Virus record (IMG/VR): IMGVR_UViG_3300032288_004964
Coordinates: 186,001 to 250,000 of that record
DNA: 64,000 nt
Reading direction: 5' to 3' (one strand)
Shown piece by piece: positions 55,572 through 59,972 of the stretch. The position numbers were made by a program, and so were the translations under genes. Positions within the stretch are counted from its first letter, which is position 1. Each line of letters starts with the position of its first letter. The notes under the pieces were generated by a model. That model was given only the letters and a program-made list of their open reading frames with translations, searched no databases and was not told the origin of the DNA.

Positions 55572-55997
55572 ATGACACTAAAAGAAAGAATAAATGCTGA
55601 CTATATTAAAGCATTTAAGGAAAAGAACAGTATTGAAAAGAATTTGCTTTCAGTAGTAAAAGCTGAAATCACTACAATTGAAAAAAATACCTCGGTTGAG
55701 AATCTTTCGGATGCTGATGTTACAAAGATTCTTAATAAAACAGCTAAATCACTGAATGAAACTATTAAATCTTTAACATCTACTGATCATAGTGAAAATT
55801 TAGTACAAGCTTGTATGGAATTGGATATCATTCAAAGTTATCTTCCAAAACAAATGTCTAAAGAAGAAGTTGATGCAAAAGTAAATGAACTTGTTACATC
55901 TGGTATTACTCAAATTGGTGCTATTATGAAAGAATTTGCAACTTTACCAGTCGACAAGAAAATGGTTTCTGAGTCAATAAAAGAAATTGTAAAATAA
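55572..55997 (+). CDS. GatB/YqeY domain protein
   Basis: MTLKERINADYIKAFKEKN...YLPKQMSKEEV...IGAIMK. Confidence 0.85.
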   Translation: MTLKERINADYIKAFKEKNSIEKNLLSVVKAEITTIEKNTSVENLSDADVTKILNKTAKSLNETIKSLTSTDHSENLVQACMELDIIQSYLPKQMSKEEVDAKVNELVTSGITQIGAIMKEFATLPVDKKMVSESIKEIVK

Positions 55998-56275: not shown

Positions 56276-56320
56276 ATGATGTAGATTTTAACATATAACA
56301 ACTTAGAAAGACCTCCTTAA
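56276..56320 (+). promoter_or_regulatory. Leader ORF with internal amber codon: MM*ILTYNNLERPP (stop TAA)
   Basis: ATG ATG TAG ATT TTA ACA TAT AAC AAC TTA GAA AGA CCT CCT TAA after TAATATATA (56260-68); its last codons overlap the 5' arm of the terminator. Confidence 0.65.
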
Positions 56321-56385
56321 TAGGAATTTAACTGACTAGCTAAATAGCACTCGGTTAGACACTTATTATGGAGGTATTTTATTTT
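56311..56385 (+). terminator. Attenuator-type terminator upstream of the Pth2-like gene
   Basis: ACCTCCTTAATAGG (56311-24) pairs with CTTATTATGGAGGT (56362-75) with one mismatch, enclosing TAACTGA/TCGGTTA; followed by ATTTTATTTT. Confidence 0.6.
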
Positions 56386-56407
56386 AAACAAAAACAAAAA
56401 AACAATT

Positions 56408-56764
56408 ATGAACAATTAGATTAATGAAACAAAATTAATAGTTATCACAAGAAGTGATATCTCAAATGGCTACCAAGTAGTACAATCAACACATTCAATA
56501 GCAGACTTTGCCTTTGAATTTCCTCAAACATTCTCCCAATGGAAAGGAGAATCAAATTCTATTATCTGCCTTTCAGTTAAAAATGAATTTGAATTACAAA
56601 AACTTTATCATAAATACAAAGACCTGACCGAAACAGTTATGTTTTTTGAACCTGATGTAGATCAGTTTACATCACTGTGTCTTTATGGTACACCAAAAAT
56701 CCGTAAAAGCCTTTCTCACTTACCCCTGGCTCTAAAAAATAAAAATCAAGAAAATGAAATTTAA
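56408..56764 (+). CDS. Peptidyl-tRNA hydrolase 2 (Pth2)-like protein with in-frame TAG at codon 4 (not in the ORF track)
   Basis: MNN*INETKLIVITRSDISNGYQVVQSTHSIADF...W..ESNSIICLSV..EFEL...FFEPD...TSLCL...LPLAL; 118 codons with no other stop. Confidence 0.7.
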
Positions 56765-57437
56765 TTTATTCAAAAAAAAGGAAAAAGTGGTAGAACCAGT
56801 TTTACCTAAACCAGTAATATACACAGTTAATAATACAAATTATACTATAGAAGATAGTTTTCCAATAAAGATACAATCACAAGCTGGTGATGTTTCTGTA
56901 TATGGTTATACATTAGAAGTTAGATGGAAAGACCAAAAAGGAGAATGGTATAGTTGGATGACTTACTGGAATCATAGAATCTATGTTAGTAGAAGTTCAG
57001 CTTTAGATGCTGCTATTAAAGTATTCCCAAGCTATAGAGATGGATATGAATGGAGAATAACTCCACTTTACAAAATGACTGAACCAGAATACAGAGATTA
57101 TAAAATTGACCAATTATTATCAGAGAAAAAAGTTAATAGAGAACCAATTGTATATGAGATTAAAGCTTGGAAAGTAAAAGATGATTGTGAAATTCATTAT
57201 GAAAAAACAAACCATACTTACAAATACTCAAAAGGAACTTTATTCATCCAAATGGAGAATGGTAATATTGTAACAATAAAGGATCCAAGGACTTTTGTTG
57301 GATATGGTAGTAGACATCATCTATTTAATGAATTGGTTAAAGATGAAAGAGTAGAAGAAGTAGACATTCAAAATGAAAAGTGGGCACATCCTCACTTATG
57401 TAAAGAATTAAAAACAAAAATAAAAAATAAAAACTAA
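56754..57437 (+). CDS. Hypothetical protein with internal RDYKIDQLL motif
   Basis: 227 aa; overlaps the end of the Pth2-like gene. Confidence 0.6.
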   Translation: MKFNLFKKKEKVVEPVLPKPVIYTVNNTNYTIEDSFPIKIQSQAGDVSVYGYTLEVRWKDQKGEWYSWMTYWNHRIYVSRSSALDAAIKVFPSYRDGYEWRITPLYKMTEPEYRDYKIDQLLSEKKVNREPIVYEIKAWKVKDDCEIHYEKTNHTYKYSKGTLFIQMENGNIVTIKDPRTFVGYGSRHHLFNELVKDERVEEVDIQNEKWAHPHLCKELKTKIKNKN

Positions 57438-57441
57438 AATT

Positions 57442-58029
57442 ATGTTGTAGATTACAAAACAAGAATTAAGTCAAAAAATGACTGAATGTTATCAGACCAA
57501 AGGTCAGTCTGTTTTAGAACACGGCATTTCAGTTAAAAATTACTTATTTGATTTAGTCAATCATTTAAGAAGTAATGATCCATTACAATATGAATGGAAT
57601 CTACCAGATTGGTTATTGCAAAATAAAGACCTTATTTTATCATCATCACCAGATGATGAAACTCTAGAACTATACACAGTCTATCATGATTGTGGTAAAC
57701 CCTTTTGTACAGAAATAGATGAAAATGGTAAGAGACATTTTCCAAATCACGCGGAAGTATCTTATAACTATTTCAACCAAGTATTTAGTAACCCAGTCGC
57801 TGCAGATTTAATACTACATGATATGGACATTCATTTATTGAAATCCGATGGTGTTGTAGAATTCTGTCAGAATCCTCAAGCTTTAACTTTATTATTAACA
57901 GGTTTAGCCGAGTTACATTCAAATGCTCAAATGTTTGGTGGTACTCAATCAACCTCTTTCAAGATTAAATGGAAGAGTATTAATCAAAGAGGTAAACAAA
58001 TTATTAATCAACTAAAAAATAAAAACTAA
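57442..58029 (+). CDS. HD-domain hydrolase; probable true start 57442 with in-frame TAG at codon 3
   Basis: EHG...YHDCGKPF...HFPNHAEVS...HDMDIH motifs; ATG TTG TAG ATT is in frame with the annotated ATG at 57478. Confidence 0.7.
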
Positions 58030-58911: not shown

Positions 58912-58987
58912 GGAACCTAAGCTAATCAGGTGAAAGCACTAGACTGAAAATCTAGGGAGCCCGGATCGATACCGGGAGGTTCCACCA
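58912..58987 (+). tRNA. tRNA-Phe(GAA)
   Basis: GGAACCT/AGGTTCC, CTAGA-CTGAAAA-TCTAG, CCCGG-ATCGATA-CCGGG, encoded ACCA. Confidence 0.92.
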
Positions 58988-58993
58988 AAATAT

Positions 58994-59067
58994 GGTGTGT
59001 GTAGCTCAATCGGTAGAGCGTTGGTTTGTGGAGCCAAAGGCAGCGGGATCGTAACCCGTCACACACC
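58994..59067 (+). tRNA. tRNA-His(GUG), second copy
   Basis: GGTGTGTG/CACACACC (G-1:C73), GCTC/GAGC D-stem, TTGGT-TTGTGGA-GCCAA, GCGGG-ATCGTAA-CCCGT. Confidence 0.9.
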
Positions 59068-59185
59068 CTGTAAGGATGGTAATCCCCTACTTTGAGTGAA
59101 AAGTAACGATGTGACGACAATCACAGAAGAGTGAAAAGTAACAAAAAAAGTAAAATTGTACTCCTCTCTTGTCGGAGAGGTAAAT

Positions 59186-59256
59186 ACGTCATACAGACAA
59201 GGTGTCGGTCAGGTCTCCAAAACCTCGATGGCTGGGTTCGATTCCTGGATGGCGTG
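59186..59256 (+). tRNA. tRNA-Trp(CCA)
   Basis: ACGTCAT/ATGGCGT acceptor, AGGT-CTCCAAA-ACCT, CTGGG-TTCGATT-CCTGG, G73. Confidence 0.85.
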
Positions 59257-59262
59257 CAAAAA

Positions 59263-59307
59263 ATGAAATATAAAAAAATGAAAACTAAAATGAAATATAA
59301 ACGATAG
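59263..59307 (+). promoter_or_regulatory. Lys-rich mini-ORF MKYKKMKTKMKYKR followed by an 11-bp hairpin, upstream of three tRNA-Lys genes
   Basis: 7 AAA codons in 14; stop TAG overlaps GGCAACGGTTC-ATAC-GGATCGTTGCC (59307-59332). Confidence 0.45.
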
Positions 59308-59345
59308 GCAACGGTTCATACGGATCGTTGCCCAAACAAGACAAT

Positions 59346-59418
59346 GATTCCGTAGCTCAATTGGTGGAGCTTCTGGCTTTTAACCAGAAGGTTGTGGGTT
59401 CAAACCCCACCGGGATCA
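59346..59418 (+). tRNA. tRNA-Lys(UUU), canonical type I
   Basis: GATTCCG/CGGGATC, TCTGG-CTTTTAA-CCAGA, GTGGG-TTCAAAC-CCCAC. Confidence 0.92.
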
Positions 59419-59427
59419 CTAAAAATA

Positions 59428-59512
59428 GATCCTGTCGCTTAGCGGCTATAGCAACTGGCTTTTAACCAGTAGAGAGAAATCTCAACCGTGGGTTCGAGTC
59501 CCACCAGGATCA
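59428..59512 (+). tRNA. tRNA-Lys(UUU) with long variable arm
   Basis: GATCCTG/CAGGATC, ACTGG-CTTTTAA-CCAGT, 17-nt variable region A-GAGA-GAAA-TCTC-AACC. Confidence 0.88.
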
Positions 59513-59517
59513 CTAAA

Positions 59518-59598
59518 GCTTTCGTCGCTTAGTGGCTATAGCAACTGGCTCTTAACCAGTCGAGAAATCAACCGTGGGTTCGAGTCCCACCGAAAGCA
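59518..59598 (+). tRNA. tRNA-Lys(CUU) with extended variable arm
   Basis: GCTTTCG/CGAAAGC, ACTGG-CTCTTAA-CCAGT, 13-nt variable region C-GA-GAAA-TC-AACC. Confidence 0.88.
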
Positions 59599-59607
59599 CA
59601 AATATAT

Positions 59608-59737
59608 GGGGAGTTAGCTCAGTGGTAGAGTATATATAACCTCTTTTGAAATTTTACCTCACAAGAGTGTTGATTAAAAGAGTTACTTCGTTTGAATTGA
59701 AATCAAAAGGTCATAGGTTCGAATCCTATACTCCCCG
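59608..59737 (+). tRNA. Interrupted tRNA-like gene of uncertain identity, with a 58-nt insertion between the D-arm and anticodon arm
   Basis: GGGGAGT/ACTCCCC acceptor, GCTC-AGTGGTA-GAGT D-arm, ATAGG-TTCGAAT-CCTAT T-arm, TTTGA-ATTGAAA-TCAAA arm. Confidence 0.6.
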
Positions 59738-59756
59738 CAAAAAAGAAAAATAAATT

Positions 59757-59831
59757 ATGAAAAATATTAATACATCAAAGTCGTCAAGTAGTCGCTCGTC
59801 AAGAATGAGTGAGATTCGATTGTATTCATAA
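59757..59831 (+). promoter_or_regulatory. Ser/Arg-rich leader peptide MKNINTSKSSSSRSSRMSEIRLYS
   Basis: 24 aa with 9 Ser and 3 Arg codons, upstream of a terminator and tRNA-Arg plus three tRNA-Ser. Confidence 0.8.
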
Positions 59832-59850
59832 TAGTCAGAAGATATTTATG

Positions 59851-59888
59851 AAACCCTCGAATCTAATGATTTGAGGGTTTTTTATTTT
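59851..59888 (+). terminator. Intrinsic terminator (attenuator) directly upstream of tRNA-Arg
   Basis: AAACCCTCGAATC-TAAT-GATTTGAGGGTTT 13-bp stem (one G-U) plus TTTATTTT. Confidence 0.85.
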
Positions 59889-59893
59889 AATAT

Positions 59894-59967
59894 GGTTCCA
59901 TCGTTCAACTGGATAGGACACTCGGCTACGAACCGAGAGATTGGGGATTCGAATTCCTCTGGAACTA
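59894..59967 (+). tRNA. tRNA-Arg(ACG)
   Basis: GGTTCCA/TGGAACT, CTCGG-CTACGAA-CCGAG, GGGGA-TTCGAAT-TCCTC. Confidence 0.92.
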
Positions 59968-59972
59968 CAAAA

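What the first reader, a model, noticed from the sequence alone, without database searches (positions are those of the whole stretch)
56408..56764. Hidden Pth2-like gene missed by ORF calling
The 118-codon frame has no ATG, GTG or TTG start between the TAG and the conserved first beta-strand (KLIVITRSD), so a full-length product needs readthrough or an AUU start. The A-rich initiation region sits in front of ATG 56408. The canonical Pth2 catalytic Lys (GK) is not evident (NGYQ), so activity may differ from archaeal and mitochondrial Pth2.
Basis: partly seen in the sequence, partly recalled or inferred. Interest (0 to 1): 0.75.

Follow-up and report, generated by a model that had tools for sequence, protein, structure and literature searches.

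The report
Amber-gated tRNA-end enzyme genes in phages
A hidden phage gene for a peptidyl-tRNA-hydrolase-like enzyme, and the HD-enzyme gene beside it, each carry a conserved UAG stop two or three codons after the start, and phages with these genes nearly always encode a UAG-reading tRNA, usually next door, so that tRNA probably switches the genes on.

Summary
Window 56408-56764 reads ATG AAC AAT TAG ATT..., followed by 114 open codons with no ATG, GTG or TTG before the conserved first strand. The product has a Pth2 fold (AF2 pLDDT 93.7; every significant PDB match is Pth2), with the catalytic Lys replaced by Tyr.

The TAG is not damage. In 76 of 80 IMG/VR relatives the first in-frame stop upstream of the domain is TAG, and 64 of these have an ATG 1-4 codons before it. 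The same leader occurs in cultured jumbo phages of Proteobacteria, Bacteroidota and Mycobacterium.

The neighbouring HD gene (leader ATG 57442, TAG 57448) has the same leader. Its domain resembles the HD part of a tRNA A-adding enzyme. The two domains are often fused in other phages.

All seven genomes examined whole or by synteny carry a tRNA with a CUA anticodon or a candidate for one. In this genome it lies about 128 kb away. Of the 80 loci, 50 have one within 10 kb on the same strand.

Restart at AUU fails as a general explanation: the next codon can be GTA, AAC or CTT, and some relatives have TAGs inside the domains.

Best reading: a gene-specific amber gate opened by the phage's own suppressor tRNA. 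This gives targets to the 'orphan' suppressor tRNAs of standard-code jumbo phages. Translation and the purpose of the gate remain untested.

The parts
56311..56375 (+). Long hairpin followed by a U-run, between the upstream 69-aa ORF and the leader. It looks like a terminator or a processing site.
   Evidence: RNAfold gives -28.8 kcal/mol, z = -6.4 against shuffles. The outer stem CCTCCTTAA...TTAAGGAGG is also present in L001 and L002. No Rfam family matches.
56386..56407 (+). A-rich, unstructured translation leader without a Shine-Dalgarno sequence.
   Evidence: Sequence read. In 50 distinct leaders the positions upstream are mostly A, with A at -3 of the ATG in 43 of 50. The link to Bacteroidota-type initiation is my inference from general knowledge.
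56408..56419 (+). Gate: ATG AAC AAT TAG. This is a start codon, two sense codons and an in-frame amber codon.
   Evidence: The same ATG + 1-2 codons + TAG arrangement is in all six huge-phage and pT24 relatives, in 64 of 80 IMG/VR loci, and in GAP32, XbC2, CBB, ME3, Arash and HyRo.
56420..56764 (+). Pth2-like domain: 114 codons plus TAA, in frame with the gate.
   Evidence: Pfam PTH2 scores 20.4 bits, below the cut-off of 23. A family profile against PDB hits Pth2 2zv3 at E 6e-9 over the full length. AF2 pLDDT is 93.7 and all 15 significant Foldseek hits are Pth2 or DUF2000 structures, TM 0.55-0.75. Invariant residues are Q22, H25, F30, W41, F75, E77, D79 and T84.
56754..57437 (+). 227-aa ORF of unknown function between the two gated genes. 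Its ATG overlaps the Pth2-like stop.
   Evidence: No Pfam, PHROG or NCBIfam hit. A 231-aa counterpart sits in the same place in L163-L166.
57442..57450 (+). Second gate: ATG TTG TAG, in frame with the HD gene.
   Evidence: The same leader precedes the HD gene in LR745206, in 13 of the 15 IMG/VR loci with a full-length HD match, and in XacN1, Xoo-sp13, RAS14 and RsoM2USA.
57451..58029 (+). HD-domain protein: ITKQELSQK followed by the 183 aa from ATG 57478.
   Evidence: Pfam HD scores 20.9 bits, below the cut-off of 22. phrog_14850, a 270-position profile, matches the Pth2-like protein in its first part and this protein in its last part, as a fusion family would. The profile against PDB gives the Aquifex A-adding enzyme HD region at E 4e-6. 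AF2 pLDDT is 97.8, and the only probability-1.0 Foldseek hits are that enzyme.
55572..55997 (+). YqeY/GatB-like protein, a conserved upstream neighbour of the module.
   Evidence: Pfam YqeY at E 2e-19 and phrog_1460. The same neighbour occurs in L167, XacN1 ORF360 and Xoo-sp13_324.
58912..59968 (+). tRNA cluster (Phe, His, 3 x Lys, Arg) about 0.9 kb downstream. The tRNA(CUA) itself lies outside the window, at G000 370132-370204.
   Evidence: ARAGORN. The tRNA(CUA) scores 59.5 bits against RF00005, cut-off 29.

Best explanation
Two neighbouring phage genes each begin with a tiny leader: ATG, one or two codons, then UAG. One encodes a divergent Pth2-fold hydrolase. The other encodes an HD phosphohydrolase related to the HD part of a class II tRNA nucleotidyltransferase. 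The phage's own tRNA with anticodon CUA reads the UAG as a sense codon, so full-length protein is made only when that tRNA is expressed, processed and charged. Without it, the ribosome makes only a di- or tripeptide. The gate sits in the variable N-terminal tail, where any inserted amino acid is tolerated. It is followed by a conserved purine-U context. Shown here: the leader, its conservation, the two folds, the fusions and the tRNA(CUA) linkage. Inferred: that the tRNA decodes these UAGs, and that both enzymes act on tRNA 3' ends (ester hydrolysis and phosphoester hydrolysis). More speculative: the tRNA(CUA) is a dedicated key or sensor, which either times the enzymes' appearance or ties their synthesis to the state of the tRNA pool they act on.
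For: 1. The TAG leader is conserved across 32-86% protein identity (figures in the observation check). It is also in huge uncultured phages, pT24, GAP32, XbC2, CBB, ME3, Arash and the mycobacteriophage HyRo (ATG TAG GTG). Database proteins begin M-x-Q, and the Q is TAG in every DNA locus checked.
2. The HD gene carries the same leader. When the two domains are fused, only the N-terminus carries it (pT24, XacN1, Xoo-sp13, RAS14).
3. Additional TAGs inside the domains need readthrough: LR756501 Pth2-like, the HD genes of GAP32, XbC2 and CBB, and L229.
4. A tRNA(CUA) is present in G000. LR756501 has two, 2 kb away. LR756500 has one 0.8 kb away, and pT24 one 2.6 kb away. ME3, Arash, HyRo, GAP32 and RsoM2USA have one 0.25-12 kb away. 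Of the 80 IMG/VR loci, 50 have one within 10 kb on the same strand, and CUA is the commonest anticodon there (51 of 582 tRNAs).
5. The genome otherwise uses the standard code: ORFs of 100 aa or more cover 89% and TAG is in use as a stop. Only these two leaders are found genome-wide.
6. Both folds have tRNA-related relatives. Among the 150 top HD representatives, 42 are fusions of the two domains.
7. The XacN1 authors found two tRNA(CUA) genes and no target genes (PMC5852040). XacN1 ORF364 has the leader.
Against: There is no direct evidence of translation or of UAG decoding. The only RNA found is one 172-nt metatranscriptome contig inside the 227-aa ORF. In this genome the tRNA(CUA) lies about 128 kb from the genes. 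Its acceptor stem has an A3-C70 mismatch. In LR745206 and LR756502 ARAGORN finds no tRNA(CUA); there is only an atypical 81-82 nt tRNA-like gene at the syntenic site. RAS14 has no tRNA within 20 kb. The HD gene has an in-frame ATG nine codons after the TAG (57478), so it could be made without readthrough. The codon after TAG is mostly ATT or ATA, which also fits restart at a weak start codon. The inserted amino acid is unknown. The complex prediction gave no answer. TAG-ended genes of this phage show no backup-stop adaptation.
Confidence: 0.72

Rival explanations
1. The leader is a mini-ORF. The ribosome terminates at UAG and restarts at the adjacent AUU, AUA or GUG, so the protein begins at the codon after the TAG and no suppressor tRNA is needed.
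For: ATT follows the TAG in 29 of 50 distinct leaders and ATA in 5. HyRo has ATG TAG GTG, and GenBank annotates the GTG as the start. ARAGORN finds no tRNA(CUA) in LR745206 or LR756502.
Against: GTA (8), GTT, AAC, CTT, ACA and AGC also follow the TAG, and none is a start codon. Restart cannot rescue the TAGs inside the domains. It explains neither why the stop is always TAG in genomes that strongly prefer TAA, nor the tRNA(CUA) linkage.
Confidence: 0.1
2. Low-level leaky readthrough by host near-cognate tRNAs keeps a potentially toxic hydrolase at trace levels. The nearby tRNA(CUA) would be incidental.
For: The purine after UAG (49 of 50 leaders) is, from general knowledge, a weak-termination context. 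This genome's tRNA(CUA) is about 128 kb away.
Against: 50 of 80 loci have a same-strand tRNA(CUA) within 10 kb, often within 0.1-2 kb. The tRNA is kept even where few tRNAs are found: ARAGORN finds only three in the whole pT24 genome, one of them CUA.
Confidence: 0.08
3. The phage, or a block of its genome, uses genetic code 15 (TAG = Gln) in general, and these genes are just two examples.
For: The large protein database translates these genes with TAG = Q. Code-15 phages with suppressor tRNAs are well known (bioRxiv 10.1101/2021.08.26.457843).
Against: Standard-code ORFs cover 89% of the genome, including ORFs of more than 1500 aa, and 33 ORFs of 100 aa or more end in TAG. A scan for conserved in-frame stops gave no excess for TAG over the TAA and TGA controls. 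Only two leader-type TAGs exist in each of G000 and LR745206.
Confidence: 0.03
4. The gene is a decaying pseudogene, or the TAG is an assembly error.
For: Annotators of several GenBank genomes left the gene truncated or split.
Against: The TAG is at the same place in dozens of diverged lineages, with the domain intact behind it. Two metagenome runs other than the likely source sample carry the same letters.
Confidence: 0.01

Closest known systems
Archaeal/eukaryotic peptidyl-tRNA hydrolase 2 (Pth2, PF01981; e.g. M. jannaschii 2zv3, human Bit1 1q7s)
   Same: Same fold over the full length (TM 0.7-0.75). The Q..H motif of helix 1 and the Thr of the C-terminal strand are shared.
   Different: Pfam and NCBIfam scores are below cut-off. 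The Lys of the GK motif is Tyr or Gln. The Asp of DAG.T aligns with Glu77 in an invariant E-P-D motif. The gene carries an amber gate. The canonical Pth2 of GAP32 (GK present) has an ordinary start.
HD region of a bacterial class II tRNA nucleotidyltransferase (Aquifex aeolicus A-adding enzyme, 3wfo-3wfs)
   Same: The 'HDxGKP ... F..H' motif is shared, and the fold aligns over about 185 columns.
   Different: It is a stand-alone 183-aa protein without the nucleotidyltransferase head. Identity is only 16-19%. The activity is untested.
Stop-codon recoding by suppressor tRNAs in alternatively coded phages (code 15 crAss-like, Lak and others)
   Same: A phage-encoded tRNA(CUA) reads UAG in phage genes while the host uses the standard code.
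   Different: Here the genome keeps the standard code and uses TAG as a stop. Only two functionally linked genes carry the codon, at codon 3-4, and the tRNA is usually adjacent to them.
Autoregulatory recoding of prfB (RF2 +1 frameshift at an early UGA), and lambda bar minigenes (AUG-AUA-stop)
   Same: An early in-frame stop makes synthesis of a translation factor depend on a recoding event. The unsuppressed leader has the form of a two-codon minigene, whose product would be a Pth substrate. Both comparisons rest on general knowledge.
   Different: The frame does not shift. The event depends on a dedicated tRNA. A feedback role is only a hypothesis.

Membership tests
Pth2 (PF01981 / TIGR00283) | Sequence score over the curated cut-off | tested here: not met
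   Pfam 20.4 bits against 23. TIGR00283 21 bits against 82. NF003314 20.8 bits against 126. Some close homologues do carry a precomputed PF01981 hit.
Pth2 (PF01981 / TIGR00283) | Pth2 alpha/beta fold | tested here: met
   AF2 pLDDT 93.7. All 15 Foldseek hits at E of 1e-3 or better are Pth2 or DUF2000 structures. The profile hits 2zv3 at E 6e-9.
Pth2 (PF01981 / TIGR00283) | Catalytic Lys of the GK motif and Asp of the DAG.T motif (catalytic roles taken from the Pth2 literature, from memory) | tested here: not met
   In the profile alignment to 2zv3, Lys aligns with Tyr18, and the pT24 homologue has Gln at the aligned position. Asp aligns with the invariant Glu77.
Pth2 (PF01981 / TIGR00283) | Peptidyl-tRNA hydrolase activity | not testable with these tools
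   Needs an enzyme assay or complementation of pth(ts).
HD phosphohydrolase superfamily (PF01966) | H...HD...D metal-binding motif and helical HD fold | tested here: met
   H15, H70, D71, H91, D115 and H119 are invariant in 79 sequences. The model is all-helical at pLDDT 97.8. The Pfam score itself is just under cut-off, 20.9 against 22.
Phage stop-codon recoding (code 15) | Many genes with in-frame TAG and low coding density in code 11 | tested here: not met
   Coding density is 89% in code 11. Only two gated genes were found.
Phage stop-codon recoding (code 15) | Phage-encoded suppressor tRNA(CUA) | tested here: met
   G000 370132-370204, 59.5 bits to RF00005.
Programmed readthrough via a suppressor tRNA (gene-specific) | The UAG is decoded as sense in vivo | not testable with these tools
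   No proteomic or ribosome-profiling data are available. The case rests on conservation and linkage only.

The most novel reading that the evidence does not exclude
The tRNA(CUA) of standard-code jumbo phages is not a general suppressor. It is a dedicated key and sensor for one module. Two enzymes that act on tRNA 3' ends (a Pth2-like ester hydrolase and a CCA-enzyme-type HD phosphoesterase) can be synthesised only through a private codon read by a private tRNA. That tRNA is itself a substrate, or a proxy, for the pool the enzymes act on. This would give a self-limiting or self-timed circuit, a tRNA-based counterpart of prfB autoregulation, conserved from mycobacteriophages to 735-kb phages.
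Probability: 0.3. Interest if true: 0.9.

Novelty: new variant of a known kind. Interest (0 to 1): 0.82.

Why it matters
Suppressor tRNAs in phages that otherwise use the standard code have been a puzzle. The XacN1 authors looked for targets and found none (PMC5852040), and the phiKp24 authors left the purpose open (bioRxiv 10.1101/2021.03.02.433402). This finding names two conserved target genes. It explains why they are mis-annotated, truncated or split in GenBank records of well-known cultured phages such as GAP32, CBB, ME3, Arash, pT24 and Bixzunaviruses. It also offers a natural, compact, portable amber switch (tRNA plus a 9-12 nt leader) that can be tested directly in laboratory phage-host pairs. 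It may represent the earliest stage of stop-codon recoding in phages: one codon, one tRNA, one module. It points as well to an uncharacterised two-enzyme system acting on tRNA ends. I found no paper describing it in five full-text searches.

Tried and rejected
- A loose pattern search for CUA anticodon loops in relatives gave no more matches than its control.
- BLAST with this genome's tRNA(CUA) against relatives found no orthologue by sequence. Synteny plus tblastx was needed.
- A genome-wide scan for conserved in-frame TAGs, with X at the stop and tblastn against relatives, was confounded by shadow frames and gene junctions. TAG gave no excess over the TAA and TGA controls.
- I tested for backup stops after TAG-ended genes and found none.
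- Translational hopping from AAT to AAT across TAG ATT is rejected. The matching landing codon is absent in LR756502 and others.
- +1 decoding of UAGA by the 8-nt-loop tRNAs is rejected for this gene, because the +1 frame closes at once.
- An initiator-like tRNA(CUA) starting at UAG was considered. G000's tRNA lacks the three G-C pairs in the anticodon stem and the 1-72 mismatch (initiator features from memory).
- Rfam has no family for the upstream hairpin.
- The sigma-70 promoter scan was uninformative.
- The complex prediction for Pth2-like with HD returned 'no answer'.
- The RNA-run search gave one small contig outside the gene.
- The tRNA's amino-acid identity could not be assigned from similarity to other phage tRNAs.

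Full report
**What is in the window.** The frame at 56408-56764 reads ATG AAC AAT TAG ATT AAT GAA ACA AAA TTA ATA GTT ATC ACA AGA, that is M N N * I N E T K L I V I T R. It runs open for 114 codons to TAA 56762-56764. Mechanical ORF listing sees only a 41-aa ORF from ATG 56639. The first ATG/GTG/TTG after the TAG is at codon 73. The window lies at 186001-250000 of a 385,333-bp phage genome with 28.7% G+C and 37 tRNA genes. Contigs from two metagenome runs other than the likely source sample span the leader with no difference listed at the TAG.

**The protein.** On its own the 114-aa piece falls just short of the Pfam and NCBIfam Pth2 cut-offs (20.4 against 23 bits). It matches phrog_1866, of unknown function, at E 7.5e-11. 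A profile of 51 family members finds archaeal Pth2 structures over the full length (2zv3 at E 6e-9). The AlphaFold model has pLDDT 93.7, and its only significant PDB matches are Pth2 proteins and the Pth2-like DUF2000 protein 2gax, with TM 0.55-0.75. The fold is therefore Pth2. In the alignment to 2zv3, the Lys of the 'GK' motif corresponds to Tyr18. The homologue from Tenacibaculum phage pT24 has Gln there. The Asp of 'DAG.T' corresponds to the invariant Glu77 of an E-P-D motif. This is a divergent Pth2-fold family, not an orthodox Pth2.

**The TAG is a conserved feature.** tblastn found relatives in six huge uncultured phages (462-735 kb), in pT24 and in Mycobacterium Bixzunaviruses. In the five distinct huge phages examined and in pT24 the gene starts the same way: ATG, one or two codons, TAG, then ATT or ATA.
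- In 80 IMG/VR loci with 32-86% identity, the first in-frame stop upstream of the domain is TAG in 76.
- In 64 of those an ATG lies 1-4 codons before it, and in 49 the form is exactly ATG-NNN-TAG.
- The large protein database holds these genes translated with TAG = Q (proteins starting MNNQINETKL..., MKQINE...). In all five DNA loci checked the Q is a TAG.
- Cultured phages of Proteobacteria show the same pattern. GAP32 and CBB have M A Q TAG N E K T W I Y V F V R; XbC2 has M A H TAG followed by the same residues. ME3 has M T TAG I H E N. Arash has M L TAG N K H W.
- The mycobacteriophage HyRo has ATG TAG GTG.
- GenBank annotations are truncated accordingly. Arash gp84c 'peptidyl-tRNA hydrolase' is 50 aa, GAP32_397 is 78 aa, and pT24 BPT24_235 starts 81 nt too late.
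- In this genome TAG ends only 33 of 377 long ORFs, against 294 for TAA. A TAG at this spot in nearly every relative cannot be chance or decay.

**A second gated gene.** A genome-wide scan for ATG + up to 6 codons + TAG + a long open frame found a leader of this form (A-rich run, ATG, one or two codons, TAG ATT) at only two places in this genome, and the same two in LR745206. One is the Pth2-like gene. The other is the HD-domain gene 1 kb downstream (ATG 57442, TTG, TAG 57448-57450, ATT...).
- The HD leader recurs in 13 of the 15 IMG/VR loci with a full-length HD match.
- It is also in XacN1 (M K TAG T I K A M...), Xoo-sp13, RAS14 and RsoM2USA.
- The two domains are often fused, in either order. 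pT24 and 36 of the 150 top HD representatives have Pth2-like then HD. XacN1, Xoo-sp13, RAS14 and 6 representatives have HD then Pth2-like. A fusion carries a single gate at its N-terminus.
- The HD protein has an invariant H..HD..H..D..H set and a confident helical model (pLDDT 97.8).
- By both profile and fold, its only clear solved relative is the HD-containing part of the Aquifex tRNA A-adding enzyme. The 'HDxGKP' motif is shared, E is 4e-6, Foldseek probability is 1.0 and TM about 0.6.
- A YqeY/GatB-like gene is a third conserved neighbour.
- Both enzymes therefore have tRNA-related relatives. I infer, without having shown it, that they act on tRNA 3' ends.

**How the TAG is passed.** This phage encodes a tRNA with anticodon CUA at 370132-370204. 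It scores 59.5 bits against the Rfam tRNA model, has one A3-C70 mismatch, and is preceded by TACATTTG, which from memory fits the Bacteroidota -7 promoter box.
- A tRNA(CUA) is found in LR756501 (two copies, 2 kb downstream of the gene), LR756500 (0.8 kb downstream) and pT24 (2.6 kb upstream).
- It is found in ME3 (0.45 kb upstream, annotated 'anticodon CTA'), Arash (0.46 kb downstream, annotated tRNA-Phe), HyRo (0.25 kb downstream, not annotated), GAP32 ('Sup-tRNA', 2.3 kb downstream) and RsoM2USA (12 kb away).
- Of the 80 IMG/VR loci, 50 carry one within 10 kb, always on the gene's strand and mostly within 2 kb. CUA is the commonest of all anticodons there, 51 of 582.
- LR756504 has a tRNA with the 8-nt loop AUUCUAAC.
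- In LR745206 and LR756502 ARAGORN finds none. At the position syntenic to this genome's tRNA(CUA) there is an 81-82 nt tRNA-like gene with a [C/A]UUCUAAC loop and a 6-bp D stem. Whether it functions is open.

**Restart at AUU is not sufficient.** ATT is the commonest next codon (29 of 50 distinct leaders), but GTA, GTT, AAC, CTT, ACA and AGC also occur. LR756501 has a second TAG inside the Pth2-like domain, aligned with Q/D/E/V/T in relatives. The GAP32, XbC2 and CBB HD genes have a TAG inside the domain, aligned with Val in ME3 and Arash. The conserved context is UAG followed by a purine (49 of 50) and then U (46 of 50).

**General code 15 is excluded.** Coding density is 89% in code 11, TAG is in use as a stop, and conserved in-frame TAGs show no excess over the TAA and TGA controls.

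**Interpretation.** The best-supported reading is a gene-specific amber gate. Full-length Pth2-like and HD proteins are made only when the phage's tRNA(CUA) decodes the UAG at codon 3-4. I put this at about 0.7.

Why the gate exists is not shown. The codon sits where any amino acid is tolerated, and where failure yields only a di- or tripeptide. The tRNA is kept even where few tRNAs are found; ARAGORN finds only three in the whole pT24 genome, one of them CUA. The gated enzymes look like tRNA-end enzymes. Together these points suggest a dedicated key or sensor tRNA that times or self-limits the enzymes. That step is speculative, at about 0.3.

Caveats:
- No translation data exist.
- The HD gene has an in-frame ATG nine codons after its TAG, so it may be made without readthrough.
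- The tRNA is distant from the genes in this genome.
- The inserted amino acid is unknown.
- The complex prediction gave no answer.

**Novelty.** Jumbo-phage reviews note Pth2 genes but mention neither an amber codon nor a suppressor link (PMC7824862). The XacN1 paper reports two tRNA(CUA) genes with no identifiable targets. XacN1 ORF364 has the leader. Five full-text searches found no description of this arrangement. Suppressor-tRNA recoding in phages is known, so I class this as a new variant of a known kind. It has high interest because it is widespread, explains orphan suppressor tRNAs, corrects many annotations and can be tested directly in cultured phages.

Noticed in passing
LR745206 about 507340-507421 (in L087, 9840-9919); LR756502 reverse strand near 609700; LR756504 reverse strand 281045-281120 (L050): These are atypical tRNA-like genes with a [C/A]UUCUAAC(C) anticodon loop. 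In the two 630-640 kb phages they are 81-82 nt long, with a 6-bp D stem and an 8-9 nt spacer after the acceptor stem. They sit at the position syntenic to this genome's canonical tRNA(CUA). ARAGORN misses them, and the best Rfam hit is tRNA-Sec at 28.5 bits, below the cut-off.
   Followed up: partly
GenBank records: L179 20961-21035 (Arash), L181 20602-20675 (HyRo), L180 (RsoM2USA), L171 1462-2028 (GAP32): The Arash tRNA(CUA) is annotated as tRNA-Phe. The HyRo tRNA(CUA) is not annotated. RsoM2USA has 27 tRNAs by ARAGORN in a 40-kb stretch where none is annotated. The GAP32 HD gene is split into three CDS (398, 398A, 399) around an internal TAG.
   Followed up: partly
window 56754-57437: A 227-aa ORF lies between the two gated genes. 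Its ATG overlaps the Pth2-like stop codon (ATGAAATTTAA), which suggests translational coupling. No family hit was found. A 231-aa counterpart is present in close relatives (L163-L166) but absent where the two domains are adjacent or fused.
   Followed up: partly
window 56311-56375: A very stable long hairpin (z = -6.4) followed by a U-run lies just upstream of the leader. Its outer stem CCTCCTTAA/TTAAGGAGG is conserved in two relatives. It could be a terminator, an attenuator or a processing site. No Rfam match.
   Followed up: partly
L168 2209-3336 (RsoM2USA_92 and _91): In the Ralstonia phage RsoM2USA, the TAG of the HD leader (M K S TAG I S K E E L) is also the annotated stop of the upstream 186-aa gene, in the same frame. 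Readthrough would therefore also give a gp92-gp91 fusion protein. A few IMG/VR loci (L208, L211, L213, L223-type, L254) likewise have a TAG with no ATG within six codons upstream.
   Followed up: no
L178 12855-13283 (GAP32_382): GAP32 also has a canonical Pth2, with the GK motif and a Pfam PTH2 hit noted in the record. It has an ordinary ATG start and no TAG leader, so the gate belongs to the divergent family. One HD representative (P0279) starts with a GK-type Pth2-like motif (GKLASQVSHA) and carries the HD domain at residues 135-317, so it looks like a fusion to a canonical-type Pth2.
   Followed up: partly
protein database hits P0001-P0120: The 5.8-billion-protein collection holds these genes translated with TAG = Gln, on short contigs. 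Readers could mistake these for real Gln codons. Other entries for the same family start inside the first beta-strand.
   Followed up: yes
window 59346-59599 and G000 tRNA list: Several tRNAs in this genome are long (81-88 nt) or have odd anticodon loops as read by ARAGORN: Lys-ttt of 86 nt, and '???' entries with acat, agta and attc. They may have introns or unusual structures.
   Followed up: no
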